Of a stretch of DNA of 64,000 nucleotides, positions 6,672-59,266 are shown one piece after another (position 1 is the stretch's first letter; each line of letters opens with the position of its first letter). The notes beneath the pieces are model-generated. The model ran no database searches. It worked only from the letters and a program-made list of their open reading frames with translations, and had not been told where the DNA came from. This stretch comes from Antechinus flavipes (lineage: Eukaryota): assembly GCF_016432865.1 (NCBI RefSeq), contig NC_067398.1, forward strand, positions 312,170,001 to 312,234,000, written 5' to 3'. Both the position numbers and the translations under genes were made by a program.

Positions 6672-6779
6672 ATATACAAACATACACACATACACACGCA
6701 CACTTGCACACGCACATATTCTCTCATCCCTATCAGCCCATTCACCCCCAATCTTCTCTAGAACAGGGGCGTAGTTCAA
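6672..6779 (+). repeat. 108-bp segment duplicated exactly at 8335-8442
   Basis: Identical sequence atatacaaacatacac...ggggcgtagttcaa at both sites. Confidence 0.95.
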
Positions 6780-8334: not shown

Positions 8335-8442
8335 ATATACAAACATACACACATACACACGCACACTTGCACACGCACATATTCTCTCATCCCTATCAGC
8401 CCATTCACCCCCAATCTTCTCTAGAACAGGGGCGTAGTTCAA
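8335..8442 (+). repeat. Second copy of the 108-bp segment at 6672-6779
   Basis: Read directly; peptide IQTYTHTHAHLHTHIFSHPYQPIHPQSSLEQGRSS appears twice in the ORF track. Confidence 0.95.
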
Positions 8443-35691: not shown

Positions 35692-38600
35692 ATGCGCCAC
35701 GTGCAGGTGGAACCAACGCCATCCCCTGAGCCTGGCCCCTCACAGCCCCCAGGTGGGCAGGGGGGCCCGAGGGGTGGGCTGCTCATGGGCTTCAGCCAAG
35801 CAGGAGGGACTGTGTCCCAGGGAGTCTACGAGGTGTCTGTCTTCTCCCCTTTGGCCAGCCCTCCTGAACCCCGTAGGGCCCTGAAGCGGCCAGGACCCCC
35901 TACTGAAGGTGTCCGTGAGGCAAAGCGAGGTCCAGGAATAGCTGGTCGGGAAGGACAGCTTCTTGAAGAGCTAGCCACAGTAGGGCCATTGGATGCTGGG
36001 CTCAGCCTGGGGCTTGGAGGGGCGGGCCAGCACTTCTCACATCGTGGTCTCCAGGTTGTGGAACATCGGGACAGTTCAAATCCATCTAGGACTACTGGAG
36101 CCTGGATTTTCCCTGGGCCTCTACCACATGCTTCCTATAGCACTTTGCACACCAGAGACTGGGGCCCTCCAGAGCCCGGGGGGAGGAGGGCCCCGGGTGA
36201 GGTCCCTGGGCCAGGGTCACCTTGTGGCCAGCTGCACATACTTGATGCTGATTTGCACAGTCTTGCACAGAAAGGGGAAGAAGACCCAGGACCCGAGATG
36301 GGCAATGGGAGCAGTCCCTGGCCTGGAGAACCCCCTGGTACTGCCAATGGACATAGTCCTGAGCATACTCCCCCAGGCCCAGTCCCCCCAGGGCCCTGTC
36401 CTGCCAAGCGGAGGCTGCTCCCAGCTGGGGAGGCTCCTGATGCCAACTCTGGAGATGAGGGACCAGCCCCCCGAAGGCACAGGGCAGCTCCTTCTGGCCC
36501 TCCCCCTGCTGCCCGAAGTACTGATGCCAAAGCTGCGCCGTTCTGGAACCACCTGCTGCCTGTTCCCAGGGAGCCAATGCAGGTGAGCCCCGAGCTGGAA
36601 AGGAAGCCTGCAGTCGTAAGTCTGCTGCCTTCTGTCTGTCTGCTCAGAGGGCTGCTCTAATCTGGTCCGTGTCTCCCTGTGAAAATAAGCAAGCTGTTAT
36701 GTACGTCCTACTGGGGCTTTCCTCCAGAGCCAGTGTCCCTCTGAGCAGATTTTGTGGAAGAAGGTCCAGGCTGATGTCCCGGCCTGGCGCATATATTCTA
36801 GGTCCCGTTTCATCTCCAGACCTTAACCTTGGCTCTTTCTTCTTCCTGATGCCCGCTCTCTGGGGGTCCTGAATGGTAACTTTTACCCTTTGAGCTCCAC
36901 CTCTCTCCTCCATGCCATGTTTCAACTCCTCTCCTCTTACTGATCGTGGCCCTCTCTTCTCCCCATCCGTTGCAGGGACTGGCAGACTGCAGTCCTACAG
37001 GACGAAGGCTGAAAGGTGCCCGAAGACTAAAACTGTAAGTGTTTGACCTCATTTTGCACATCATCTCCATGTCAGCTCAGCACAAGGTTGTTCCTTTTCT
37101 TTCTGCAGATGGGTATTTAGTCCAATAAGCCCCGGGGAGGTCAGGGGGGAGATGGGATGGATATTTTAGTGGTAGAGAAAAGGTGGTAGGGAGGGAAGCT
37201 GGGAGTAAGGAGACTATACTGAGTAGCCTCTTTCTCTTCCCCTTCTTAAGGAGCTCCCTGCGAAGCTTCCGGAAGGGACCAGGCCTGCTGATCTCTCCCA
37301 GTGCTCCTCCTGTTCCTACCCTTGCTGTCAGCCACACCCTGCTAGGCAATTTTGAGGTACTGACTTTCCTGGGTCTTGGAAAGGTGGGGAGGGGGTGAGA
37401 GAAGGATTAATAAAAGGAGAGATTTCCATGCAGAGAGGGCCCCATGGAAATCATTTTAAGGAAGTGTTGGAAAGGTCTACTTCTCTCCTTTAATATGCTG
37501 TCCCTGAGGCAGCCAGATGGTTCAGTGGACAGACCCCAACCCTGAAGTCCACAGAACTCGAGGAGTTCAAATGTGGCCTTGGAGACTAAACACTTAGTAG
37601 GTGTGTGACCCTAGATGAGTCCCCTTAACTAACCCCTATTCTCTCACCAAAAAAAAAAAAAAAAAAAAACCACCAAAAAACGTTATTCCTTATTAACATT
37701 TAGGAGTCATTGCTTCGAGGTCGATTTGTACCATCTGGCCACATTGAGGGCTTCACTGCTGAGATTGGGGCCAGCGGTTCCTACTGTCCCCAGCATGTCA
37801 CCCTGCCTGTTGCTGTCACCTTCTTCGATGTCTCTGAGCATAGTGCCCCTGCCCCCTTCCTGGTAAGTACTGCTTGGGCCTGTTTTACAGTTGCTGGAAA
37901 ATTATGGGGAAGGTGGGAGTAGGGGGTGGGGGAAGGGGAGGAGGAACAGGAGAGGAATGAGAGGAAAATCATCAGCTTTTGCCAAATTTCCTCTCCGTCC
38001 TCTCTTGGGAATCTGGTGAACACGTCTGGGTCAAGAGCTTTGGGGACTGGAAAGTTCCTGGAGGTTCTAGGACTAAGAGGTTGGGGGCGCTGAGTTGGAA
38101 GAGGGGACTCTGGGCTCCTGGGGACTTGGGTTCTCTTAGCTGATGGCTCCATGGCTCCTCTGGAATCCCCAGGGCGTCGTGGACCTGAATCCTCTGGGGA
38201 GAAAGGGCTATAGCGTTCCCAAGGCGGGCACCGTTCAAGTGGTGAGTCTGCCCCGTGGGGAGAAAATGGGTGGCAGCAAGCCCCTCCCAACCCCACAACT
38301 ATGGAGTTTAGGGCGGGAGGGGATGGTGGGATAGCCCCCTAGGGTTTTTCTTAATCCTTTTCTCCCTGCCCCCAGACCTTATTTAACCCTAACCAGACGG
38401 TGGTGAAGATGTTCCTTGTGACCTTTGACTTCTCGGACATGCCTGCCGCCCACGTGACCTTCCTTCGCCACCGACTCTTCCTGGTGCCTGTGGGTGAGGA
38501 GGGCAATGTGAGCCCCACCCGCCGCCTCCTCTGCTACCTGCTGCACCTCAGGTACAGGTCAAGGATATGTTGGGGAAAACACAGGGTCTTCCTTAGATAC

Positions 38601-42700: not shown

Positions 42701-45700
42701 CCCCTTTTTTCTCTCACATTCTCAGGATCCCCACCTCCCTTGTTTTGTTTTTCCCATCCTTGCTGCCCCCATGTCTACTTTTTATTCGTACATCCAAGGT
42801 CCAGCAAACATGTGAGCCTGTGCTGTGAGCCTGTCTCCCTTTTTACAAAAAGGGATGTTCTTCCAACTCTTGTTACTGTCCTATTCCATGTTCATTTCTT
42901 GTCCTGAACTTTCCTCGTGTAAGGAAGCCTCTGTAGCACACGTTCCTGTTCCTCACTCTCCACCCTGTCAGGAAGGTATCTTAACATCCATTTTCCCATT
43001 TTATCCCTGCTATCCCCAACCTCCAGTCTCTGTCTTACCCACTCTCCCCATTTTCCTTTTCCCCACCTCCCTATCCATTGTTATTTCTTCCAGGGTCCCA
43101 GAGCCTGGCTGGGCCCCACTCAATACCGGACAGCTTCAGGCCTACCGAGAAATACAGTCGTGCTGTTTGTGCCGCAGCAAGAGGCATGGGTAGTGGAGCG
43201 GATGGGTCGATTCCACCGGATTTTGGAGCCAGTGAGATTTCCATTTTTCCTTCCCTTTTACCTGTGGGGAATAGCTGGGGAAAGCACTGACTATGAAAAA
43301 AAAATGAACCAAGCATTTATTTAGCACTTATCATATGCAAAGCATTGTACTCAGTAATGGACATACAGATAGGGAAAGTGTGGCAGTCTTTTCTTTCAAG
43401 GAACTCACCTTCTAATGGGGAAGACAACACATGGATTATCTAGAAGCACCTATGGACTGAATGTTCTTGCATAGGGACTATTTCTTCTTAATTTCTACCA
43501 GATCCTCTGACCCTTCCTCCCACTCTTAACCAGGGTTTAAACATCCTAATCCCTGTGCTGGATCGAATCCGATATGTGCAGAGCCTCAAGGAGATTGTCA
43601 TCAATGTGCCTGAACAGTCAGCTGTAACCCTTGGTGAGGAGGGCACTCTTCCTTGTGCCAAGGCTCAAAGGGGAGCAACCACTGTCATTCTGCATTTATG
43701 TGCAAGTGTCATTGTGTAAAGGGGTGTATGATTGTGGGTGACTCTTAGTTGAATGTGAGTGCATGAGAGAACTGAGGAGCAATTGGGAGTCATGGTAGAG
43801 AAAGCCAGTAAGGGAAGGAGGGAAGGATACATTAGAGAGGGAAGAGGAAGGGCTTTGGGGAGAAAGAGGAGCTGTGAGATAGAGGCTGAGAGACAGAAGA
43901 CCTTGACTTCCTCCCGTTTTTCCCTAGACAATGTGACGCTACAGATTGATGGAGTACTTTACTTGCGCATCATGGACCCTTATAAGGTATCTTTCTACTT
44001 CCAAATTTGTGGGCAATTTTTATGACTCCTTATCTTGGGACATTATATTCCTTATCATAAACTCTTCCCCTAGGCGAGCTATGGTGTAGAAGATCCAGAG
44101 TATGCAGTCACCCAGTTGGCTCAGACGACTATGAGAAGTGAGCTTGGAAAGCTCTCATTGGATAAAGTTTTTCGAGTGAGTGGAGTCAGGTCACAGCTTT
44201 TGGTCACTTAGGGTAAAAGTATAAAGGCTCCTTTTTACATACTTGTTGTATTTAATCTTTCCCCTGGAGACTTGATGATGTGATGGGGAGTCAAGGGAAG
44301 GTGTCACGTTGTCTGCCTGTTCCAGCTCCCTAGAACAGGGCTCCCACTGAGATAAATAAGATGTTATCTCATCTTTATCCCACACCAGGAACGAGAATCC
44401 CTGAATGCCAGCATTGTGGATGCCATCAATCAGGCCTCTGATTATTGGGGTATCCGCTGTCTCCGCTATGAGATCAAGGACATCCACGTACCTCCTCGAG
44501 TCAAAGAGTCCATGCAGATGCAGGTTGGGGGAATGAGGGCGTGGCTCTTGGAATGGTGGGGCAGCTTAAAGCTGGAAACCATAGGAACTGGGAAGGAGTC
44601 ATTGGTTGCAGAGACAGAGACCATCCTGTTCAAATGCCTAGTGAGAATGGCAATGGAATCTGTTTTTTAGTCCCTGGTCCCTGCTCTTTCATCTTCCTGG
44701 GAAGATTCTATTGATGGGGATTATGGTTATCCATATCTGAATTCTCTAGCCTTCTTTTTACCTCCAAGATGACCTTGGGATGAGAAAGTATAGCTGTGTC
44801 TCTGTTTGAGTGCTATCCCTGATAGCCTGAAAACTAGGTCTGTCTCCTTGGTGACCTTGGGGTGGGGTGACCCTGCTTCCAGGTAGAGGCAGAACGTCGG
44901 AAACGTGCAACGGTGCTTGAGTCAGAGGGAACTCGGGAGTCTGCCATCAATGTGGCTGAGGGAAAGAAGCAGGCACAGATCTTGGCCTCTGAGGCAGAGA
45001 AGGCTGAACAAATCAACCAGGCAGCTGGTCAGTGATGGTGGGGGTAAAGAGGGGGTCTGGTCTGGCCAGACTTCTATCCCTGTAGGGATTCTGGCCAGGA
45101 ACAAGTTTTCCCTGTTTGCTGTCACTGAGAACTCTTGCCCTCCCCCAGGCGAGGCCACTGCAGTGCTGGCCAAAGCAAAGGCCAAGGCTGAGGCTATACA
45201 GATCCTAGCAGCAGCTCTGACACAACAAGTGAGTGAATAATAGGAGGTAGGAGATTTCTTGTCCTATTCCTAAGCAGGAATGCTCCACAGGTGTTCCCCT
45301 ATCTACTTTTGGGGGGTTCTCTTGAAGCTGTGTTCCCTGTAATCTGAACTCGTCATCTCTGAAGTGTCACATCTTCTATAATTCCTGACTTCCCACTTCC
45401 CTTGATTTAACCTCAAAATGCATTCCCTAAGCCTATGTCCTTTGACTCTATGGCCTTGTGATCCTGATTTCTTGTTTCCCATGGCCCCTGACCTCACCTG
45501 TCCCCATATTTCCTGATCTCATTTCTCATGACCCCTTATGTTATTTATACTTCTTGTAATTCTTGACCTGATGATCGTGGTGGTGACTACAGAATGGAGA
45601 TGCAGCAGCTTCCCTAACAGTGGCCGAACAGTATGTCAGCGCTTTCTCCAAACTGGCAAAGGATTCCAACACCATTCTGCTACCTTCTAATCCTGGAGAT

Positions 45701-47382
45701 GTCACTAGCATGGTGGCTCAGGTTAGAGTCTCCCTCAGCATCCCCATTTTAGTTGAATTCTACCAGAAACTGAAGTAGTCTCTCAGATCACCCCAGGGAA
45801 CATTGTCTCTAGATGTTGTTTCTGGATCTCTCCTTTCCTGAAGATCTTCCTCACATCCCCAATCAAAAATAATTAAATCTTCCTGCAGAAATAGTCTTGT
45901 TCTTCCCCCTTTCAAGTTGAATATCCTCCTTCCCAATGAAGTACTGATTCTCCACCTCCAGTACATGAATTACCGTTCACTGTGGGTCCTCACTTCTCCC
46001 TTTCCACCTATGAATCAGTCAGTCGGCCTTAAGGTTTTTACTGTCTATTCTCTGCCTATTGTCCTATTCCATGTGGAATGCTCCACAGGTGTTCCCCTAT
46101 CTACTTTTGGGGGGTTCTCTTGAAGCTGTGTTCCCTGTAATCTGAACTCGTCATCTCTGAAGTGTCACATCTTCTATAATTCCTGACTTCCCACTTCCCT
46201 TGATTTAACCTCAAAATGCATTCCCTAAGCCTATGTCCTTTGACTCTATGGCCTTGTGATCCTGATTTCTTGTTTCCCATGGCCCCTGACCTCACCTGTC
46301 CCCATATTTCCTGATCTCATTTCTCATGACCCCTTATGTTATTTATACTTCTTGTAATTCTTGACCTGATGATCGTGGTGGTGACTACAGAATGGAGATG
46401 CAGCAGCTTCCCTAACAGTGGCCGAACAGTATGTCAGCGCTTTCTCCAAACTGGCAAAGGATTCCAACACCATTCTGCTACCTTCTAATCCTGGAGATGT
46501 CACTAGCATGGTGGCTCAGGTTAGAGTCTCCCTCAGCATCCCCATTTTAGTTGAATTCTACCAGAAACTGAAGTAGTCTCTCAGATCACCCCAGGGAACA
46601 TTGTCTCTAGATGTTGTTTCTGGATCTCTCCTTTCCTGAAGATCTTCCTCACATCCCCAATCAAAAATAATTAAATCTTCCTGCAGAAATAGTCTTGTTC
46701 TTCCCCCTTTCAAGTTGAATATCCTCCTTCCCAATGAAGTACTGATTCTCCACCTCCAGTACATGAATTACCGTTCACTGTGGGTCCTCACTTCTCCCTT
46801 TCCACCTATGAATCAGTCAGTCGGCCTTAAGGTTTTTACTGTCTATTCTCTGCCTATTGTCCTATTCCATGTGGAATGCTCCACAGGTGTTCCCCTATCT
46901 ACTTTTGGGGGGTTCTCTTGAAGCTGTGTTCCCTGTAATCTGAACTCGTCATCTCTGAAGTGTCACATCTTCTATAATTCCTGACTTCCCACTTCCCTTG
47001 ATTTAACCTCAAAATGCATTCCCTAAGCCTATGTCCTTTGACTCTATGGCCTTGTGATCCTGATTTCTTGTTTCCCATGGCCCCTGACCTCACCTGTCCC
47101 CATATTTCAGTACTCACATGCATCTCCTCTCCCTGGTGTCTTGTTCCCGTCTCTTGTTCCCCCATTTTCATGCCTCTGTCCCTTGCCCTAATTTTTTATG
47201 TGTTATTACACCAATCATGTAATTTTGTTTTTTTCCAATCCCAGGCCATGGGTGTGTATGGAGCCCTTGCCAAAACCTCTACCACCGAGGCACCACGCTC
47301 AGTCTCTGATGGAAAAATCAGGGTTGCCCAGCGTGCAAATACTGGTCAGGATGAAGAACTGGAACGTGTAAAACTGAGTTAG
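42344..47382 (+). CDS. STOML2: Stomatin-like protein 2 (SLP-2), mitochondrial SPFH protein, 356 aa; exons 42344-42388, 43094-43231, 43534-43633, 43928-43986, 44074-44175, 44389-44523, 44883-45027, 45149-45228, 45593-45721, 47245-47382 (extra exon 9 copy at 46391-46519)
   Basis: Peptides MLVRAARG, VVLFVPQQEAWVVERMGRFHRILEP, DNVTLQIDGVLYLRIMDPYK, ASYGVEDPEYAVTQLAQTTMRSELGK, VEAERRKRATVLESEG, AMGVYGAL...ELERVKLS*. GT-AG introns; 1071 nt with a single exon 9. Confidence 0.96.
45277..47108 (+). repeat. 798-bp direct tandem array, ~2.3 units (A 236 bp x3, B 562 bp x2)
   Basis: Read directly; identical ORF-track translations recur at 798-bp offsets (45303/46101/46899; 45760/46558; 45917/46715). Confidence 0.97.
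46391..46519 (+). CDS. STOML2: Second identical copy of STOML2 exon 9 (43 aa, phase 0-0)
   Basis: Same 129 nt and same flanking ctacag|...|GTTAGA splice sites as 45593-45721, offset by 798 bp. Confidence 0.6.
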
Positions 47383-47527
47383 CAGAGCCTAGCTTGGCTT
47401 GTGGGCCCTGGGAATCCTGGGAGAGGCTTCTGATCCAGGACCCATCTTTACCCCACTGCCCTCAACACTTCTGGACCCCTCAGCCAAGATTTTGGTTTTT
47501 ATTTTTTTATTTGAACTTTAATCATGT

Positions 47528-47533
47528 AATAAA
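47528..47533 (+). terminator. STOML2 polyadenylation signal AATAAA
   Basis: AATAAA ~145 nt after the stop codon. Confidence 0.75.
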
Positions 47534-48449
47534 TACATCTAGTGGGACAGCAGCAAGAAGCAGTCTCATTGTCTTATAATTTGGGGGAAAGTTCAGGAAA
47601 CTGGTTTTATAGTTTTATGAGACTGTGGATTGACTTTTTCCTGCATACTCCACATCCATATTGGGGTTTGGAAGCATTTTTTTCCCTTCAGAAGTTGATA
47701 TGGCAAGTAAGGCAGGTATTAAGGAGGTTTTAAAAAGGAACACTGGAAACTCTCCACAACACCTCCATGCTTTCTGTTTTCCCATTGTAGAAGAGGGTAT
47801 TGGAGGCCTTCGAGAAGAATCTCTTGTTTCCTGTTGCCCTGGGGAATCACTGCTCAAACTTATGGGGTAATAATTACCTATTAAGGGTGATATGGAAAGC
47901 TCGATTTTTTTTCTTCTTACTGTCTTGAGGGATTTAAGACCAATCTCACCCTAGTTAGCCAACTGCACCATATAGCTTATACTCCCACATAAGTCCACCC
48001 CAGGGGCTTAGTCAAAATCCACAAAAAGCCTGCTCTTGCGGCATTTCTGCAATAACCTCTGGGTTCATCTCCCTTTGTTTTTGAGCTGACTTAACTAGGG
48101 CTGGACACCAGACAAAAGGACTTATAAACACTAGTGGAATGGAAGAATACTGGATCAAACAAAACTCTCACCTCAAATGCCACAATTCTGTTTAATCCTT
48201 TCCTCTTGCCCCCATTTAAAAGAGTTTGACCCCCTTCTGCTTCTACCCCTGATTAGTGTCACAGGCCTCAGAAGTGCTAACTGGGAGAAAATGTCCAATA
48301 CGAAGGGACCCTCTCAACTTCCTCCCCTTACTGCCAACCCAGAGTGGTGATTTGCAGATTAAGAAACATTTATAAACACCGTCTTGCCCAACACATGCTA
48401 GCTGCTGGGGATGCAAAGGCAAAAAAGGTCCCTCCACCGTTCAGGACTG

Positions 48450-49000: not shown

Positions 49001-50539
49001 CCGCATGCCCTGCATCCTCCCGCCGACCCATATGTCTCTTCCACTCCTAAGGCTCCTCACTTCCTGCTAGTCTCTCCCTAATATCCCTCACCTCTTCCCC
49101 TTCGTTCCTGTGTTCCTGCATCCCCCAACCCCTACCCCTTACACCCTTAAAGCATCCCACTCCCCGCTACTCCTTTCACTATCCTTAACCCTTCCCTCTC
49201 TCGTGACCCCGTCCTCCTGACGCCGCCTTCCTGTGTCCCCAACATCTCTTCTCCTGACCCCATCTCCCCCAATGCTGTTTCTGCCTTCTTACTCTCTCTC
49301 CGTCACTTAGGCCCCAGTGTCCTGTCCTAGTAGCTCTCTTCCTTCACCACTGTCCACCTATTGGTGTATTTTAGGTTCTTCCCGACCTCTGCTTTGGGCA
49401 CTCCTTCATCCCCTTCTCCCCTCCCCCTTCCCTAATGGTTCCTTCCTTGGTGCTTAATCTTTCCAAATGGGGAGTGGCTTGTGCTTATGGTCCTGGTGAG
49501 GGTGACTTTGACAGGGGAGAGGCTGGTCTCAGGGGAGGGGGGGCTGGAGGGGGCTGGGAGGCGGTGCTTCTAAGCTGAAAAAGCAAAGGGCCCCATGCTG
49601 CTCACTGCCCAAACCTGTTTGTGGGGCAGGGAGGGAGTAGTAAAAGGAGAAAGTTTTAATTAAGAAAGAGAAAAAAATGAGAGGAGAAAGGATTCATAGG
49701 GATATCTTGGGTTAGAGAACTTGTTTTTTACTGTATCCCATGTCCCAGAGAAGTAGTTGTTGGAGTGATATTCCATTCTCACACTTGCTGTTCAGCCATT
49801 TCTTTCCAGCATTTAAGTGTCAGTCACATGCCAGACCGATATCATTTAACCCTCATTTCATACAATTCTTATGTGTAATAATAATATAAAAGTGCTAATA
49901 TTTCCCTGGCACTTTAAGGTTTGCAAAACATATTGAACATATTTTGCTTTTATCCTAACAACCACCCCAGAAGGTAGGTGCTATTATTATCTTCGTCTAA
50001 TCTCCAGTTTTCTTGGTATAGCTCCAGTTGCTGTAGTACAAGATTTCTAACCAAAAAATAAGGAGGACCTAACACTGATGAATTCCTCAGGTCTGATGAA
50101 AGTCATAAGATCCTAGCTCTAAAGAGAGAACCTACCATAGAGACCATGTAGTTAGATTTACAGAAATGAAAACTGAGACATAGCATGAAACAGCCCATAC
50201 CGTTAGTGAAGTAGGATGGAACTATTTTTATTTAAAAATTACAGTAATCAAACTTGGAATGAAAGGTGACTTGTACTGTTGAGTTAGAGAATGGGTTCAA
50301 GGAAGGCTTATTAAGATAGTGACTTTGAACTGAAATTTGATTGAAAAGAGAACCTGTTTTCTGTAGCTTAAGTGTTCTTGATTAGTCTGCCTTGAAGATT
50401 TATATGAGAGAGAGATAGAAAAAGGGATTCATGGGGGTGGGGGGGGCGGAGAGAGGGAAGAGAGAGAGGGAAAATGTGCACAAGAGTTTGAATGAGCAAT
50501 GAGAACTTAAGTAATGTGTCTGTCTTTCTGATATACAGA

Positions 50540-53500
50540 ATGCTGAAGGCCCTGGTATTGCTTTTCCTGGCCTGGGTCTGCTTCCTCTTTTATGCTGGAA
50601 TTGCTCTCTTCACCAGTGGCTTCCTGCTCACCCGACTGGAGCTTACTAATCATAGCAGCTGTCAGGAATTGCCTGGAAAGGGACCTCTGGTGGGAGGTGG
50701 CCGAGGTGAACCCGGAGCCTGCTGGACAGCTCCCCGATTTTCCCGAGCTGTGGTAGTGTTGATAGATGCACTTCGATTCGATTTTGTACAACCTTGGTCA
50801 GGTGGCCTTCCTGCCCAATACCCCTACCTAGGAAAACTAGGTTCCATACAGCACCTTTTGGAAACCGAGCCACAACATGCCCGCCTGTATCGGTTCCTGG
50901 CTGACCCACCCACCACCACCATGCAGAGACTCAAGGCCCTCACCACAGGCTCTTTACCTACCTTCATTGATGCTGGGAGCAACTTTGCTAGCTATGCCAT
51001 CCAGGAAGATAACCTCATCGCTCAGCTCAACAACACTGGTCAGTCTAAAAAGATTATGGAATGTTAGAATCTTAGAATGTTAACGTTTTAGGATGTTAAA
51101 ATGATATTAACCTAGAATTGAAAGGGATCATCAGGCCAGATTCCCACTCAGTGAGGAATCCCTTCTCTAAAACCATGATGAGGAGTTATCCTGCATTTGC
51201 TTTTATACGTTTAGCAGCAATGTTAATCATTAGAAATTTCAATTCTGAAACTTAAATCTGTTGCTCCCAACTACAAAATAAGTATGCTTCTTTGTGATAG
51301 TCCTTTGCTATTTGAAGATAGCTATTATGTCTACCTTAGACTATTTTACCCAGGTTAAATGTCCTCAAGTCATTCAGTCCATCTTTATATGATAATATTT
51401 TCAGGCCATCACACATCATTCTGGTCATACCAATATGTTCCTGCTATTCTCCCCTTAATATCAGTTTGTTAATGTTGATATCATGGTACCCAAAGGGAAC
51501 ACAACATTTCTAAAGTGTTGTGTGTTACCTCCTGCAGTTATATTTCTTTTAAACATTAATGTCTAAACTATATTAAATACTATATTCCTTCTAATTTAGC
51601 CTAAAGTCACAGTTTTTTTGGTCTCATAATTGATTCATATTGTAAGCCCAGACCTCTTAAAAAACTCAATACTTGAACTGCTGTTAAGACAAAGAGGTTA
51701 GTGTAGTAAAGAACTTTAGAGACTAGGTAATCTAGGATTTTTTTTGCCTGGAGTCCATGAGCTTTAAAAAACATATATGTATATACATGTTAACTATTTA
51801 TTCGTTACAATTGGTTTCCTTTGTAAATCCTATGTGTTGTTTTTTATGCATTTAAAAACATTATTCTGAGAAAGGCTTCTTGGGTTTTATCTACTAATGA
51901 AGAGGTCAGTAATACAAAGAACCAGATGAACCTATGTTGTGGCCCAACCCTCTTAATTTTTTGAATGTACTAGGTCTAGTCAAGTGAAATGATTTACCTA
52001 AAATGGTACAATTAATTTGTGGAAGAGTTGTCACTAGAGCCCAGATGCTCTTCCAGTCTTATGCTTTTTCACAATATGCTACAGGTTCTTCTCATACTTT
52101 ACCTTCCTTCCTTGTGTGTTCTCTTCACTATCACAGAGTCTCCACTTTCTTTGAGGCTTTTTTCCTACTGTTTTATCTGTCTCTGTTCTCCTTATCAGCA
52201 ATTTAAACCCCCGATGCATACCCAGCCCTGTGCTAAACTTTGTTGGCCCACAATAAGGATATAGTCTTTCCCCTCCCCCCCAAAAAAGTTTACAACATAA
52301 TTGAGGAAAATTATTTACTTTTATTAAACAACTAGAGAATGATAAAAGAAACAAACTCTTTGGTGGACTGGATTATTTTTGATTGTTGACTGGTACAACT
52401 AAGTATTTATGTGGTGAATTGTTTTTATCAGACTACTATAGATTAGCTATTTGAAAGGAAAGATTATGGTAGATTAGAATGGTTGGGTAAGGTTTCATAT
52501 AGGAGGCATGACTTGAATTGCATTTTTAGTAATGGGTAGGATTTGGATAAGCAAAGAATGAGGAGGGGAGGGTATTACAGATGGTATGAATGGTATAAGC
52601 AAGGGCTGGGATGTAAAAATGGAAATGGGTCATTGCCTTTTGAAAAGAATGACATGGCTAAAGCAAAAGATTTATATTGATGAGGGAAGAAAAGAAGGGA
52701 GAATTGTAGAGTGAGGCCATATTATAAAGTAATCTTCAAAAATTTTCCCTGACTCTTCCAATGCTGCAGGGAAACGTGTGGTCTTCATGGGGGATGACAC
52801 TTGGAAGGGGCTGTTCCCAGGAGCTTTCTCTCAAGCCTTCTTCTTCCCATCTTTCAATGTTAAAGATCTACACACTGTGGACAGTGGCATTCTGGAGCAC
52901 CTCTACCCTACCAGTGAGTAGTCCTAAATGGGATCTGGGCTTAGATTTTAATGGAAGGGAGAAGTGGGGATAGACCAGTCTTATATTTGGGCCATATTCT
53001 GATAAACTCAATTTGTAAAATATAGAATTAAGACCATTGGAGACTATTTGTATTTGTCCCAACATACATTGGATCTGATTTTGAGCTGCAGTATGCAGAG
53101 GGGTAAAGATGTGATGCTTTGAAAGTCCTTTGGATGGTACTTTCCTGGGTGATGAGATTTGGAGTCAATTTCCATTGGTAGAGGATATTAAAGGCTGAGA
53201 AATGAAGGAGGGGTATCAGGTACTTTGTCTCAGTGTTGCTATCTACAGTGGACAGAGATGACTGGGACCTGCTGATTGCTCACTTCCTGGGTGTAGATCA
53301 CTGTGGCCACAAACATGGTCCCCACCATCCTGAGATGGCCAAGAAGCTGAACCAGATGGACCAGGTGCTTCAGTAAGTTGTACCAGAGAAATTTAGTTGT
53401 AGGCAGGAAGCAGGGCCTAAATTGATGATGGAGCAAAGATAGTAACTCTTTGGGGATAGAGAGGGAGGGAAAATGAGAGAGGAAAACAGACAAACAGACA

Positions 53501-56500
53501 CAGAGGAGTAAGAGTGTTTTGAGTGTGGTAGGGGGTAATTAGGTATGGAGCATGATCTGGTCAGGACTGCTTTCATCTTCTAATATAGTGTGGGAGTAGA
53601 TCACTCTATATTTGTTGGTTCTCTATCGAAGTACTTAATGTGATTAGACATTCATTATTGAGATTTTGTCTAATACTCTGCTGGCTCCACTTAATTATTG
53701 CCACCAGTATTCCCTTTCAGAAATTTGAGGTCATGTTTATTTGGGTTCCCTCTATCATTGAGTAACTTGGGGTCTCATTGAAAACTAACCTGAGGGTAAT
53801 GGGGTCTGATTACCAGTGGGACTTTAGACAGAGCAGTTAACCTATCTGGACTTCAGTTTCTTTTTATGAATTAGAAAATTTATTTGAACTGTTTGCTTCA
53901 TAGAGTTTTATCATGTTAGGGCTAAACAAGATAACTTGGCATCCTGTAAAACCACAAACTCCTAAGACTGCTCTTTTAATGAGTGCCAGGGGTCAAGGGA
54001 TGACTATACTCAGGGTAGTATCTTCCCAAAGGTTTCTTCTCTTCCCCCCACTGTTTTGTGCCGTGCAATTAGGACTCTTGTGGAGCGACTGGAGAATGAT
54101 ACATTGCTGGTGGTGGCTGGAGATCATGGCATGACAGAGACAGGAGACCATGGTGGGGACAGCAAGCCAGAAGTAATGGCTGCCCTCTTTCTCTACAGTT
54201 CTTTGCCCCTTTTCCCCAGGGCACCCCCGGAGGTAAGTTCAAAAAGCCATTAGTTTTTTTTCCCAGGTCTTCTCTTCCCTTTTGACCCCTTGGACTCTTT
54301 TTCTCTTTTTGATCTCATTATCTATTAGGTGACTATTTCATCCTCTTCCCCACAATTAACAAGCCACCTCCATATTATCCCTTACCTCAGATATTTTATT
54401 GTCCCCATACTTCTACCACCTTCCCATCCCTTCCCTTTCTCTTTAGATACCTTATTTTAATCACTTTTACCTATCTCTATCACTTTTAAATGTTCTTTTC
54501 TTTGCTCCTCCTCATTGCACTCTGGACTTTGGTCTTTTTCCTCCACCCTTTCCACTGATTCTTTCCTACCTTTGGTTTTATTGCCTCCAGGACCCGGAAG
54601 TGGTTCCCCAGGTGAACCTGGTACCGACACTCGCCCTTCTGCTTGGCCTGCCTATACCTTTTGGAAATATAGGAGAGGTGATGGTGGATCTGTTTTCAGG
54701 AGAAGTAGATACCCAGCCTCTTGCTACAGCTTTTGCACAAGCCTCTGCCTACCATCTCAATGCCCAACAGGTATGGGAGCAGGGGACAGGGCTGTCTTGG
54801 ACTAGAATCTAGGAGTTAGAAACTTGAACAGAAAACCTACAACCCATGCCTTCATGTTCATCCTTTCTCTACCTATCATCTCCTGACCCATTTCTGTTCT
54901 TTACTTATCCTATATAAGATGTGGGTTCTAGCCCTGGGGCTTTCTGGCTACTGTACATTTCTGTTTTTTCCCCCCTCCACCCTTTCCATGCCTTATTGAC
55001 ATTTTCTTTCCTGTACTCTTTCTGCAGGTATCCCGTTTTCTTCATGCTTACTCATTAGCTGCCCAGGACTTGCCCCCTGAGGAATTGCAGCGCCTTCAGA
55101 ACCTCTTTTCCTCTGCATCTTCTGAATACGAGCGACTGCTAGATCAGCTGAAGAATGAAGAGGTCAGAGAGGCCGACGTACAGGCTCTGATCTCCCAGCT
55201 GAGATTGTTCTTGCAGGGAGCGAGGACAGCCTGCACAGAGACATGGGCTCGATTCCGCCCAGCCCGAATGATAGGGGGCACTGTGCTCCTGGCCTTCACC
55301 TGCCTCCTCTGCCTAGTGACCTCTGGGCTCACCAGCTCCCCTGACTTCCCTTTCCTAGGCCTGCTCCTAAAGTCTGTGGCCTGGGGCCTGGTAGGAGCTG
55401 CCTTGCTAGCTGGGGGACTGATAGTAGGAAGGAGTGGGCTAGACCCAGCTCTGTTGTGTTCGGGTGGTGCAGCCACTTCCCTCATGGCCTTCCTCTGGGC
55501 TTTAAAATGGAGAGAGAAGCCACCAATGGCAGTCTTTCTCCCAGGCCCTTTGCCCATCCTGGTGCTCCTTTTTCTTCGATCTGCTGCCCTCTTTTCTGAC
55601 AGCTTTGTCCTGGCTGAGGCCCGGGCAGCCCCCTTCCTTTTGTGTTCATTGTCCCTGTTTGTGGTGGCTCAGCTGCACTGGGAGGGCCGGCTTCTGGTGG
55701 GGGGACCCACAGCTTCTTGCCTCAGTTCTCCCACAGCATCTGTGGCACGGCGGGAGGGTCCTCGGGCCTTGGGGCTATTGGTTGGCCTGCTCCTGTGTGT
55801 ACGTCTGTCCAGTCTCTTCCATCGCTGCCCAGAAGAGACACCTGTTTGCCAATCATCACCCTGGTTAGCTCCTTTATCTTCAGTGGGTGGTGGCCAGGCC
55901 AAAAACCTTTGGTATGGGGCATGTCTAGGGGCACTAGGGGTGCTCGTCCTGTCTGTAAGATTTTGGCTGCGCCGCTGTGGGAATCTGAACAGCTCTGCAC
56001 CTCCAATCCTCTTTGTGCGCTGGGGATTGCCACTGATGGCTCTGGGCACTGCTGCTCACTGGGCATTGGCTTCAGGCTCAGATGAGGCACCCCCCAGGCT
56101 GCAGGCCCTGGTGTCTGGAGCTGTGATAGGGTTGCCACGGGTTGTATTGGGTCTGGCAGCCATAGGACTAGGACTGCTTCTTTGGCAGCCTGTCACAGTA
56201 TTGGTCAAGACTGGGGCAAGCAGCCCCAACCCCATCGTTGTCCCTTTTGTGGGACCCCCTGCTTCCCAAGCTGACTTGGACTATGTAGTCCCTCAGATCT
56301 ACCGTCGAATGCAGGAGGCACTGAGGGGGAAGCTGGCTGGGGGTGGGGGCCAGACACCACTGGCACTGGCAGCCTACGGGCTGGGGAGTGTGTACTCTGC
56401 CGCCGTGGTGACCACTCTTGCCCTGCTGGCCTTCCCGCTGCTGCTGCTACACACTGAGCGGATCATCCTCGCCTTCCTGATCCTCTTCCTTCAGAGTTTC

Positions 56501-59266
56501 CTACTCTTGCAGCTGCTCGCCGCTGCTGTTGGAACCCCTGCTGGAAGCCCTGGTAGGCGGCAGGGCAGTCCCGTCCATAGATACCCCTAAAATATCCATC
56601 TCCTTGCCCTTGGAACAGCTATACTCCCAGGTGGACCATCGAGGCTGGGGAGAAAGGTTGTCCTCTCCTTAGTAATGACAGGCCTGCTTCAGTCACCTTG
56701 ACATTTGGTCTTACTTTGTAATAGTGACAACTAGATCTTGAGGAAATTCTGATCTGGGAGAAGTCAGGGCTCAAACACTCCCCTCCCCTCCCCCCGCTCC
56801 ACACCTATTGCCTTCCCCACTCTAATCAGGATTGTTTCCTTTGGAGAAGTTTTACTCCACTGATTAATCTCTAGACAGTTAGGTGACCATTTGTCTACAA
56901 CAGTGAGCATTGGGGAAGTTGGATCAGGGTGACTAGGCAGAGGAGATGGATGCAAAATGGGAGCAGGATTAAAGAGTAGAAATGGTCAAGGAGCAGAGTA
57001 CAGGAAAGTCATGTGACAATGTTGGGGGGAAAGGAGAACAAGCTAACAGTGTTAAGGTGATAAATTTGTGTGTTCTTCCCAGGTCCCTTCTCCGTGCCAT
57101 GGCTATCTATTTCTGCTTGGGCTCTCACAGCCACTCAGACCTTCTACTCCACAGGCCATCAACCTGTCTTTCCAGCTATCCACTGGAATGCTGCCTTTGT
57201 GGGCTTCCCTGAAGGGCATGATTCATCCCCTGTGCTGCCCGCTCTGCTCGTAGGGGCCAACACCTTTGCCTCCCACCTTCTTTTTTCAGGTATCTCATCC
57301 CCCAACCTCCATTCCGTCTCCTGAGACTAAGACTCTAGAAGGGAGTGGTGGTAGTTTCCACCTGAGTGGGGGAAGGGAAGAAATTTACTGTTTCCTTTGA
57401 TCTCAGTTGCTCAGTGTGTAAGACTTTGGCCGAGGCATCATGAGACACTGGCCCCTTGGCACCTTTTGTTAGAGAGAAGGGTCCTCCTTTGTGAAGTCCC
57501 TAATCTGGTCTCATTAAAGCACAGAATTAAGTCAGGATGGGGCTGTCCTATGGGAATCGAGACTTGTTCTTGGAACCTAAGGTAACCTCAGACCTATTTC
57601 CCCTCACCCCCGGAGGCAGTTGGCTGCCCACTGCTCTTGCTCTGGCCCTTTGTGTGTGAGGGCCAAGGCTCTACAAAGAAGAAAAAGTCCCTGACCAGTG
57701 GGGCTGAGGAGGAGGGAGAGAAGGAGGAGCCATTGATGGAGATGCGTCTCCGGGATGCCCCTCACCATTTCAATGCTGCTCTACTACAGCTGGGCCTCAA
57801 GTACCTCTTCATCCTGGGTATACAGGTGGGTATGATTAACTTGATATGGCTGGGAATTTCAAGGGAGGGAAGTTGAAGGGTTAGTCATTTTAAACTTGTA
57901 TATACCATTTTACAATTTTTTTTTTTATAATCTGTTGGTGTTTTGGGGGGAGGGAGGGAGGGAGGATCACACTGTCACTTCCCAATGACTTCCTAAAATA
58001 AGTACCACCAAACAAAACAAATCAACATCTGCTAAGTGAGAGGAGACATGCTTCACTCTCAGTCACCTCAGTTTTCCAAGCTCATTGAAATACCTTTTCT
58101 CATTTGGTTCCACAGTCCTATATAAAAAGACCAAAATAATTTTTTCCAACTTAGAGGTAAGGAAACTGAGGCCCATGTTATTTCTCCAGGAATGCATATT
58201 GAATCACTGGTAGAATGGAGACTACAACACATATCTCTTGGCTCTGCTTCCAATTCCTTTTGTACCACACCACGATCCAGACCCAACTAATGATGTTCAA
58301 CTGACCAAGGAAACCCGATGTAATCCATATCCCCAAGGGATGGAAATACACATTTTTCACTCAATTTTTTCCCAGTGTGAGGGAGCAGTAATTTGTTTAG
58401 CCTTACCCTCAAGGAAGGTGGGGAGCTCTGAGCACTAGAGACAAGAAATTGCAGAATTTTAATAGAACTTTCGGAATGACCATTTTCTCCATGAAGTAGC
58501 TATGGTTCATGTAGTTAAATGACTTGCCTGAGATCATACAGCAAGTTAGTAGACAAGTCAGGAGTAGAATCTGGACCCACAAGAGTACCGAGCTGTGTTC
58601 TTTCTGTCACACATGCCTCTGCTCTTCTCCTCATCCTCAGAGTTTTCCTCTCATCTTTCTCTGCCTCTTCATACACCATCCCTTTCTCCCCCTTCTCATC
58701 CCTCCTCATCCTCACTCTTCTTTTCCTCATTCCTTCTTTCCCTCTAGGTCTTAGCCTGTGTTCTGGCAGCTTCCGTACTCAGGAGACATCTCATGGTCTG
58801 GAAGGTGTTTGCTCCCAAGTGAGTAACTGTTTTCAATCAGGGGAGGGATGTAGGGTGGATGGGGTCCAGAGTTAAATGAGAAGTTGAATGGATGCTTTTT
58901 GATTTGGGTATCAATCTGCTTAGACACAAAGTAAAAGGGAAGTAGAGAGGTATCTTCTGGAAAAGGGTTGGTAGTGACCTGGTGAATTAGGAGTTTGTAT
59001 GTTCTCCCAGAGTGTTAAAGTAAGGAGTGGGAGAGAGTGGGCGGAAAAGGCTAGCCTCCAGTGAATCTTAACAGTTTGTATTAATGTTCCACCACCATAC
59101 TACAGCATCCTAATGCCCCTGCCTCTCTGCTTGTAGGTTCATCTTTGAAGCTGTGGGTTTTGTGGTGAGCAGCGTAGCCCTCCTTCTGGGTGTGGCACTG
59201 GTCATGTGGGTAGACAGAGCTGTGGGATCCTGGTTCAAGCAGCTCATTCTATCCCAAGAGAGGTAG
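50540..59266 (+). CDS. PIGO: GPI ethanolamine phosphate transferase 3, 1081 aa; exons 50540-51038, 52770-52913, 53249-53372, 54073-54232, 54591-54770, 55028-56552, 57083-57289, 57620-57825, 58748-58818, 59137-59266
   Basis: [24 protein letters not shown] start; alkaline-phosphatase-superfamily motifs [32 protein letters not shown]; multipass hydrophobic exon 7; [17 protein letters not shown] introns; 3246 nt in frame. Confidence 0.96.
51730..51930. mobile_element. hAT-Charlie MITE (Charlie4z-like), opposite orientation
   Basis: attggtttcctttgtaaatcctatg...atgcatttaaaaacattattctgagaa. Confidence 0.55.

What the first reader, a model, noticed from the sequence alone, without database searches (positions are those of the whole stretch)
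45277..47108. In-frame tandem duplication of STOML2 exon 9 inside a perfect 798-bp array
Seen: exon 9 (NGDAAASLTVAEQYVSAFSKLAKDSNTILLPSNPGDVTSMVAQ, 129 nt, phase 0 at both ends) occurs twice, at 45593-45721 and 46391-46519, with identical splice sites; no differences were visible by eye. Splicing both copies gives a 399-aa rather than 356-aa protein with no frameshift. Established: STOML2 is a conserved mitochondrial SPFH/stomatin scaffold, and this segment lies C-terminal to the SPFH domain in the helical region implicated in oligomerisation. Inference: if real, this is a very recent, possibly polymorphic exon duplication that lengthens the oligomer stalk or provides raw material for mutually exclusive exons. 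Perfect identity equally fits a false duplication in the assembly.
Basis: partly seen in the sequence, partly recalled or inferred. Interest (0 to 1): 0.75.

Follow-up and report, generated by a model that had tools for sequence, protein, structure and literature searches.

The report
Perfect doubled STOML2 exon 9, unverified
The yellow-footed antechinus reference genome shows exon 9 of the mitochondrial scaffold gene STOML2 twice inside a flawless 798-base repeat, but I could not get read evidence, so it is either a known kind of assembly error (a false exon gain) or a very young real exon duplication.

Summary
Window 45277-46310 equals 46075-47108 base for base, which gives 2.30 copies of a 798-nt unit. 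The 129-nt exon 9 (43 aa, Pfam Band_7_C, E=3e-20) and its splice sites occur twice.

New points:
- The array has the form A-B-A-B-A (A = 236 nt, B = 562 nt and holds the exon). One simple duplication cannot produce that form. It needs an earlier A...A direct repeat around exon 9 plus one more "loop".
- The extra loop could come from unequal recombination in the animal or from an assembler going round the loop once too often.
- The window is from Antechinus flavipes, 727-Mb chromosome. That assembly was built from noisy PacBio reads with wtdbg2 v1.2.8 and polished with Pilon using 100-nt reads. wtdbg2 is known for "glitches", and 100-nt reads cannot span A.

The decisive tests could not be run:
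- Protein word searches found no antechinus STOML2 products.

My odds are about 50% artefact (true gene has one exon 9), 40% real young and probably polymorphic duplication, 10% other. Either way it is a known kind of thing. Interest is low to moderate until spanning reads or RNA junctions are checked.

The parts
45149..45228 (+). STOML2 exon 8 (80 nt; last 26 codons read from 45151)
   Evidence: AG before, GT after, stop-free in frame with exon 9
45259..45270 (+). 12-nt motif that also lies just before A copies 2 and 3 (46059-46070, 46857-46868); separated from A by 6 nt here and by 4 nt there
45277..45512 (+). A copy 1 (236 nt, in intron 8)
   Evidence: 100% identical to copies 2 and 3
45513..46074 (+). 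B copy 1 (562 nt: 80 nt of intron, exon 9, 353 nt of intron)
45593..45721 (+). exon 9 copy 1 (129 nt, 43 aa, phase 0 at both ends)
   Evidence: Pfam Band_7_C E=3.1e-20
46075..46310 (+). A copy 2
46311..46872 (+). B copy 2
46391..46519 (+). exon 9 copy 2, identical to copy 1
46873..47108 (+). A copy 3, followed by unique intron sequence
47245..47382 (+). exon 10 coding part (45 codons) and TAG stop
44389..44526 (+). exon 6, part of the SPFH domain
   Evidence: Pfam Band_7 E=2.3e-5, above the curated cut-off

Best explanation
Most likely the second exon 9 is an assembly artefact, a 'false exon gain'. On this reading the animal's STOML2 has one exon 9 and encodes the ordinary protein. What the genome really holds is at most L-A-B-A-R: a young 236-nt local copy (A) sits in both intron 8 and intron 9, flanking exon 9. 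In an assembly graph such a layout is a loop (A to B to A), and the number of turns has to be decided by the software. Either the consensus-joining step of wtdbg2 v1.2.8 or Pilon's local reassembly with 100-nt reads, which cannot span the 236-nt A, took the loop twice. That wrote A-B-A-B-A. Shown here: the exact anatomy, the species and the published assembly method. Inferred: that the extra turn was made in software.
For: (1) The array is 2.30 units, A-B-A-B-A. A single non-homologous tandem duplication gives 2.0 units. This form needs a pre-existing A...A repeat plus exactly one extra loop, which is the ambiguity graph-based assembly faces. (2) The window is A. flavipes: the ATOSB exon matches the NCBI protein of that species at 100%, on a 727,308,865-nt contig. 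That assembly used Canu-corrected PacBio reads, wtdbg2 v1.2.8, and Pilon with 100-nt BGISEQ reads. [quoted passage not shown] Within-contig 'sequence expansions' and 0.3-2.3% false duplication are reported across assemblers, and a wtdbg2 assembly had by far the most genes without a transcript alignment (PMC9668749). False exon gains are a described class of annotation error (PMC9516828). (4) The copies show zero differences over 1034 nt. The only other young local repeat in the 64 kb is also 100% identical, and nothing lies between 81% and 99%. A steady natural process would give a spread of ages. (5) Exon 9 is strongly conserved: 98% to eutherian-like fragments, 89% to a frog, 84% to a bird. 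A 43-aa insertion there would probably be selected against. (6) Other agents' unchecked notes report reference-only errors in this assembly.
Against: About 100x of long reads each span the 1.8-kb array, so the assembler had the information to count the copies. No assembly gap or N lies nearby, whereas classic false duplications usually sit at gaps. An assembler cannot invent the B-to-A junction, so at least A-B-A must be real. A perfect 236-nt direct repeat is a good substrate for real unequal recombination. Other agents' notes say several young local copies in this genome were confirmed in relatives (unchecked). No read, depth or RNA test was obtained.
Confidence: 0.5

Rival explanations
1. 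A real, very young germline duplication, probably polymorphic. Step 1: a 236-nt piece of one intron was copied about 0.8 kb away into the neighbouring intron (a local templated insertion), giving A-B-A around exon 9. Step 2: unequal crossing-over or replication slippage between the two perfect A copies gave A-B-A-B-A. Both exon copies keep identical branch sites, acceptors and donors and are separated by a 669-nt intron. Both would therefore be spliced in, adding 43 aa in frame to the Band_7_C region of the protein.
For: The assembled sequence shows it with intact splice sites and frame. A is 236 nt and perfectly identical, which from general knowledge is about the length that supports homologous recombination. 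The middle and last A share the same left flank (12 nt, a 4-nt patch, then A), as expected if both derive from the intron-9 copy. The contig is long-read based with no gap. A similar perfect 108-nt local copy lies in the same window. Other agents report many such copies in this genome, some shared with relatives (unchecked leads). Ko et al. describe a true allele-specific tandem duplication inside a contig.
Against: It needs two events at one locus, both so recent that 1034 nt carry no substitution. It inserts 43 aa into a segment that is 84-98% conserved across tetrapods. There is no independent read, relative or RNA support. The assembler is error-prone.
Confidence: 0.4
2. The whole repeat structure, including the A...A repeat, is artefactual, and the true locus is L-A-B-R or L-B-A-R. 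Alternatively the true copy number is higher, or differs between the two haplotypes in a way that the collapsed assembly misreports.
For: Both young local repeats in the window are perfect and shorter than one 256-nt wtdbg2 bin. The bin size is from my own knowledge of the program and is a speculative link.
Against: A consensus step would have to create junctions that no read contains. No mechanism is known to me that would paste a 236-nt perfect copy 798 nt away.
Confidence: 0.1

Closest known systems
False exon gain from a homotype false duplication (Ko et al. 2022, PMC9516828)
   Same: An exon is duplicated within its gene in the assembly. The copies have no haplotype-specific differences, which produces a longer predicted protein.
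   Different: [quoted passage not shown] Here there is no gap, and depth could not be measured.
Tandem exon duplication as a route to longer proteins or mutually exclusive exons (general knowledge, e.g. Letunic, Copley and Bork 2002; not read here)
   Same: A phase-0, symmetric exon is duplicated in tandem with its splice sites, and the frame is preserved.
   Different: Known examples are old and diverged. Here the copies are identical, so no alternative isoform diversity exists yet, and fixation is unproven.
Non-allelic homologous recombination or slippage between short direct repeats
   Same: Perfect 236-nt direct repeats flank the duplicated segment, and the product A-B-A-B-A is the expected gain allele.
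   Different: No reciprocal deletion allele or population data are available. The same product is what a graph assembler makes by one loop too many.
Local templated insertions (repair or replication template switches)
   Same: A is a 236-nt copy of sequence about 0.8 kb away. A second perfect example of 108 nt, copied 1663 nt away, lies in the same window.
   Different: The 12-nt shared motif with a 4/6-nt mismatched patch at the left edge does not fit simple microhomology priming in either direction.

Membership tests
STOML2 (stomatin-like protein 2) gene | SPFH/Band_7 domain followed by a Band_7_C region | tested here: met
   Exon 6 hits Band_7 at E=2.3e-5, above the cut-off. Exon 9 hits Band_7_C at E=3.1e-20. 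The search was done exon by exon; the joined protein was not built.
STOML2 (stomatin-like protein 2) gene | Conserved neighbourhood (ATOSB upstream) | tested here: met
   35692-36657 is 100% identical to ATOSB of A. flavipes. That human STOML2 is adjacent to ATOSB and PIGO comes from my own knowledge.
Real germline tandem exon duplication | Two exon copies with intact splice sites and preserved frame in the sequence | tested here: met
Real germline tandem exon duplication | Duplication junction and copy number supported by independent reads (spanning long reads, or normal depth on each copy) | not testable with these tools
Real germline tandem exon duplication | Linear transcripts with an exon 9-exon 9 junction | not testable with these tools
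   No RNA reads could be laid. The word searches found no antechinus STOML2 fragments.
False exon gain / homotype false duplication | Copies without haplotype-specific differences | tested here: met
   0 mismatches in 1034 nt
False exon gain / homotype false duplication | Adjacent assembly gap or unsupported join | tested here: not met
   No N in the 64-kb window. An unsupported join without N cannot be seen from the sequence alone.
False exon gain / homotype false duplication | Read depth per copy about half of normal or lower | not testable with these tools
NAHR-type gain between direct repeats | Identical direct repeats of about 200 nt or more flanking the duplicated segment, with a hybrid repeat at the junction | tested here: met
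   A = 236 nt, three identical copies. This is equally expected from an assembly loop.

The most novel reading that the evidence does not exclude
The duplication is real and both copies are spliced in. Some yellow-footed antechinuses would then make a 43-aa-longer SLP-2 with a doubled Band_7_C segment. That would be a naturally segregating length variant in the part of an SPFH scaffold thought to close or stack the oligomer, caught within at most a few hundred thousand years of its birth. Its precursor state (a 236-nt repeat on both sides of the exon) would still be visible.
Probability: 0.3. Interest if true: 0.45.

Novelty: new member of a known kind. Interest (0 to 1): 0.3.

Why it matters
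If real, it is a clean snapshot of how a symmetric exon is doubled: a local copy first creates flanking repeats, and recombination then doubles the exon. It would also be a natural experiment on how much extra length the C-terminal region of a conserved mitochondrial SPFH scaffold tolerates. If false, it is a concrete example of a false exon gain inside a gap-free long-read contig. That would warn that perfect sub-2-kb repeats in this widely used antechinus reference, and the protein models built on them, need read-level checks.

Tried and rejected
- **Read laying.** I asked for window 46281-48100, chosen to avoid the long repeat. Local reads of the window (ORF listing, and self-BLAST in the sandbox) did include them passively.
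- **The look-up of encoding contigs.** It was closed, so no relatives' loci could be fetched.
- **Word search with the exon-9 open stretch.** It returned only fragments from other species. P0001 looked eutherian and could be human, so I did not use it further. P0018 shares exon 9 but has a different intron, and its species is unknown.
- **Word search with 47002-47379.** Nothing was found.
- **RefSeq STOML2 protein of A. flavipes (356 or 399 aa).** It could not be reached. The joined-protein step was left out.
- **Big HMMER search.** Not used: the operators reserve it for open proteins, and its 50%-identity representatives would not separate the antechinus protein anyway.
- **PDB sequence search with exon 9.** No hit.
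- **TRF.** It is blind to a period of 798.
- **Older homology at the array edges.** Alignment of L against the end of B, and of R against the start of B, found only the 12-nt motif.
- **P0026 resemblance.** An intron-derived peptide of P0026 weakly resembles the A-to-R junction (E=8). It is not significant and was dropped.
- **Bacterial promoter/terminator scan.** It was irrelevant.
- **Numerical coincidence with wtdbg2.** The 1034-nt repeat and 236-nt overlap resemble wtdbg2's 1024-nt nodes and 256-nt maximum node overlap. I could not test this and give it no weight.

Full report
**Observation.** A script comparing the window with itself at offset 798 finds one uninterrupted exact match, 45277-46310 to 46075-47108 (1034 nt). 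The repeat finder reports the same three-copy family. The array 45277-47108 is 1832 nt, or 2.296 units. The window has no N. The 129-nt exon at 45593-45721 recurs at 46391-46519. Both copies translate to the same 43 residues without a stop, are preceded by AG and are followed by GT. Exon 8 (45149-45228) ends on a full codon. Exon 10 (47245-47379, TAG at 47380) starts on one. Including both copies therefore keeps the frame and adds 43 residues.

**Gene and species.**
- Exon 9 matches Pfam Band_7_C (E=3.1e-20), and exon 6 matches the SPFH domain Band_7 above its cut-off.
- The other exons are visible as open stretches on the + strand between 43.2 and 45.2 kb.
- A 322-aa open stretch at 35692-36657 is 100% identical to 'atos homolog protein B isoform X2 [Antechinus flavipes]', encoded on a contig of 727,308,865 nt.
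- The genome paper gives the largest chromosome as 727.3 Mb (PMC9290055). The window is therefore from the AdamAnt reference of the yellow-footed antechinus, as other agents' notes had said.

The array is not two units. It has the form A-B-A-B-A:
- A = 236 nt, at 45277, 46075 and 46873.
- B = 562 nt, at 45513 and 46311, and it holds exon 9.

Only four junction types exist: L-A, A-B, B-A and A-R.

A single non-homologous tandem duplication gives exactly two units. To obtain 2.3 units with A followed by unique sequence, one of two things is needed. The first is an earlier state L-A-B-A-R, with a 236-nt copy in both intron 8 and intron 9, plus one extra B-A turn. The second is a three-jump replication accident. 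The first is simpler.

A 12-nt motif lies 6 nt before A copy 1 and 4 nt before copies 2 and 3, so megablast extends the homology to 45259 with a small mismatched patch. Copies 2 and 3 share the same left flank, as expected if both descend from the intron-9 copy. The patch does not fit simple microhomology priming in either direction, and I leave it unexplained. L, R, A and B have no other relatives in the window.

**What could decide it, and what happened.**
- The look-up of sequencing runs listed two samples that hold 0.90-0.91 of the words, three further organisms at 0.62-0.74, and one at 0.39 with RNA runs.
- To respect the rule against long repeats, I asked read laying for 46281-48100: the tail of A, then B, A and R. 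With that stretch, a B-to-R or exon 9-to-exon 9 join would have shown as a joint.
- The exon-9 word search returned only ORF fragments of other species. A search with the stretch spanning the A-R junction and exon 10 returned nothing.
- No read depth, spanning read, relative's locus or RNA junction was obtained. I sent nothing from 47481-47523 to any external search afterwards.

**Priors from the assembly method.**
- The reference was made from about 100x PacBio reads corrected with Canu 1.7. It was assembled with wtdbg2 v1.2.8 and polished with Pilon 1.23 using 50x of 100-nt BGISEQ reads.
- The HPRC comparison reports within-contig 'sequence expansions' and 0.3-2.3% false duplication across assemblers. 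It also reports over 1,600 genes without transcript alignment for its wtdbg2 assembly, against 100-400 for most others (PMC9668749).
- Ko et al. define false exon gains and homotype false duplications. They also show a true allele-specific tandem duplication inside a contig (PMC9516828).
- An A-B-A layout is a loop in any graph-based step. Reads of 100 nt cannot cross the 236-nt A, so polishing could neither detect nor correct one turn too many. Joining a left extension 'L-A-B-A' to a right extension 'A-B-A-R' through a single A gives exactly A-B-A-B-A. This mechanism is my inference.
- On the other side, each long read spans the whole 1.8 kb, there is no gap, and the B-A junction must exist in reads.

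**Other internal hints.**
- A self-comparison of the 64 kb finds only two young local direct repeats, and both are 100% identical: this array and a 108-nt pair 1663 nt apart. Every other local repeat is 68-80% identical. A steady natural process should leave intermediate ages. With only two cases this is weak evidence, and unstable repeats may be lost before they age.
- Exon 9 is 98% identical to eutherian-like fragments, 89% to a frog and 84% to a bird. A 43-aa insertion there is more likely harmful than neutral, which lowers the odds that the reference animal carries a real one.
- Other agents' notes (unchecked) cut both ways. They describe reference-only errors in this assembly and young local copies confirmed in relatives.

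**Verdict.**
- Best guess, at 0.5: a false exon gain. The true locus has one exon 9 flanked by a real young 236-nt repeat, and software went round the loop twice.
- Rival, at 0.4: a real two-step, very young and probably polymorphic duplication, made by a local templated copy followed by unequal recombination between the A copies. Both exons would be included, and the Band_7_C segment would be doubled.
- Remaining 0.1: other assembly states.
- Either outcome belongs to a known kind. The tests that settle it are simple and are listed under next steps.

Noticed in passing
window 6672-6779 and 8335-8442: A second perfect direct repeat: 108 nt, 100% identical, 1663 nt apart. It flanks a CpG-rich stretch and a MIR-like SINE. 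It has the same A...A layout as the presumed precursor of the STOML2 array. Real local templated copy or assembly glitch is unknown.
   Followed up: partly
window 45259-45276, 46059-46074, 46857-46872: A 12-nt identical motif followed by a 6-nt (copy 1) or 4-nt (copies 2, 3) non-matching patch lies directly before each A copy. Neither simple microhomology priming nor a clean breakpoint explains it.
   Followed up: partly
window 35692-36657 (+): Large ATOSB (FAM214B) exon, 100% identical to the NCBI A. flavipes protein and 98% to the Tasmanian devil protein. It fixes the species and the chromosome (727.3 Mb).
   Followed up: yes
window 50492-51067 and 55070-56590 (+): Long open frames with many hydrophobic segments downstream of STOML2. 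From memory of the human 9p13.3 gene order they look like PIGO exons. Not searched.
   Followed up: no
They lie in the STOML2 3' UTR region. I worked beside them.
   Followed up: no
window 45722-45727 and 46520-46525: The exon 9 donor reads GTTAGA, with a non-consensus T at +3. The acceptor has a purine-rich stretch just before the AG, with its pyrimidine tract further upstream. The splice sites are therefore only moderate, which would matter for whether both copies are included if the duplication is real.
   Followed up: no
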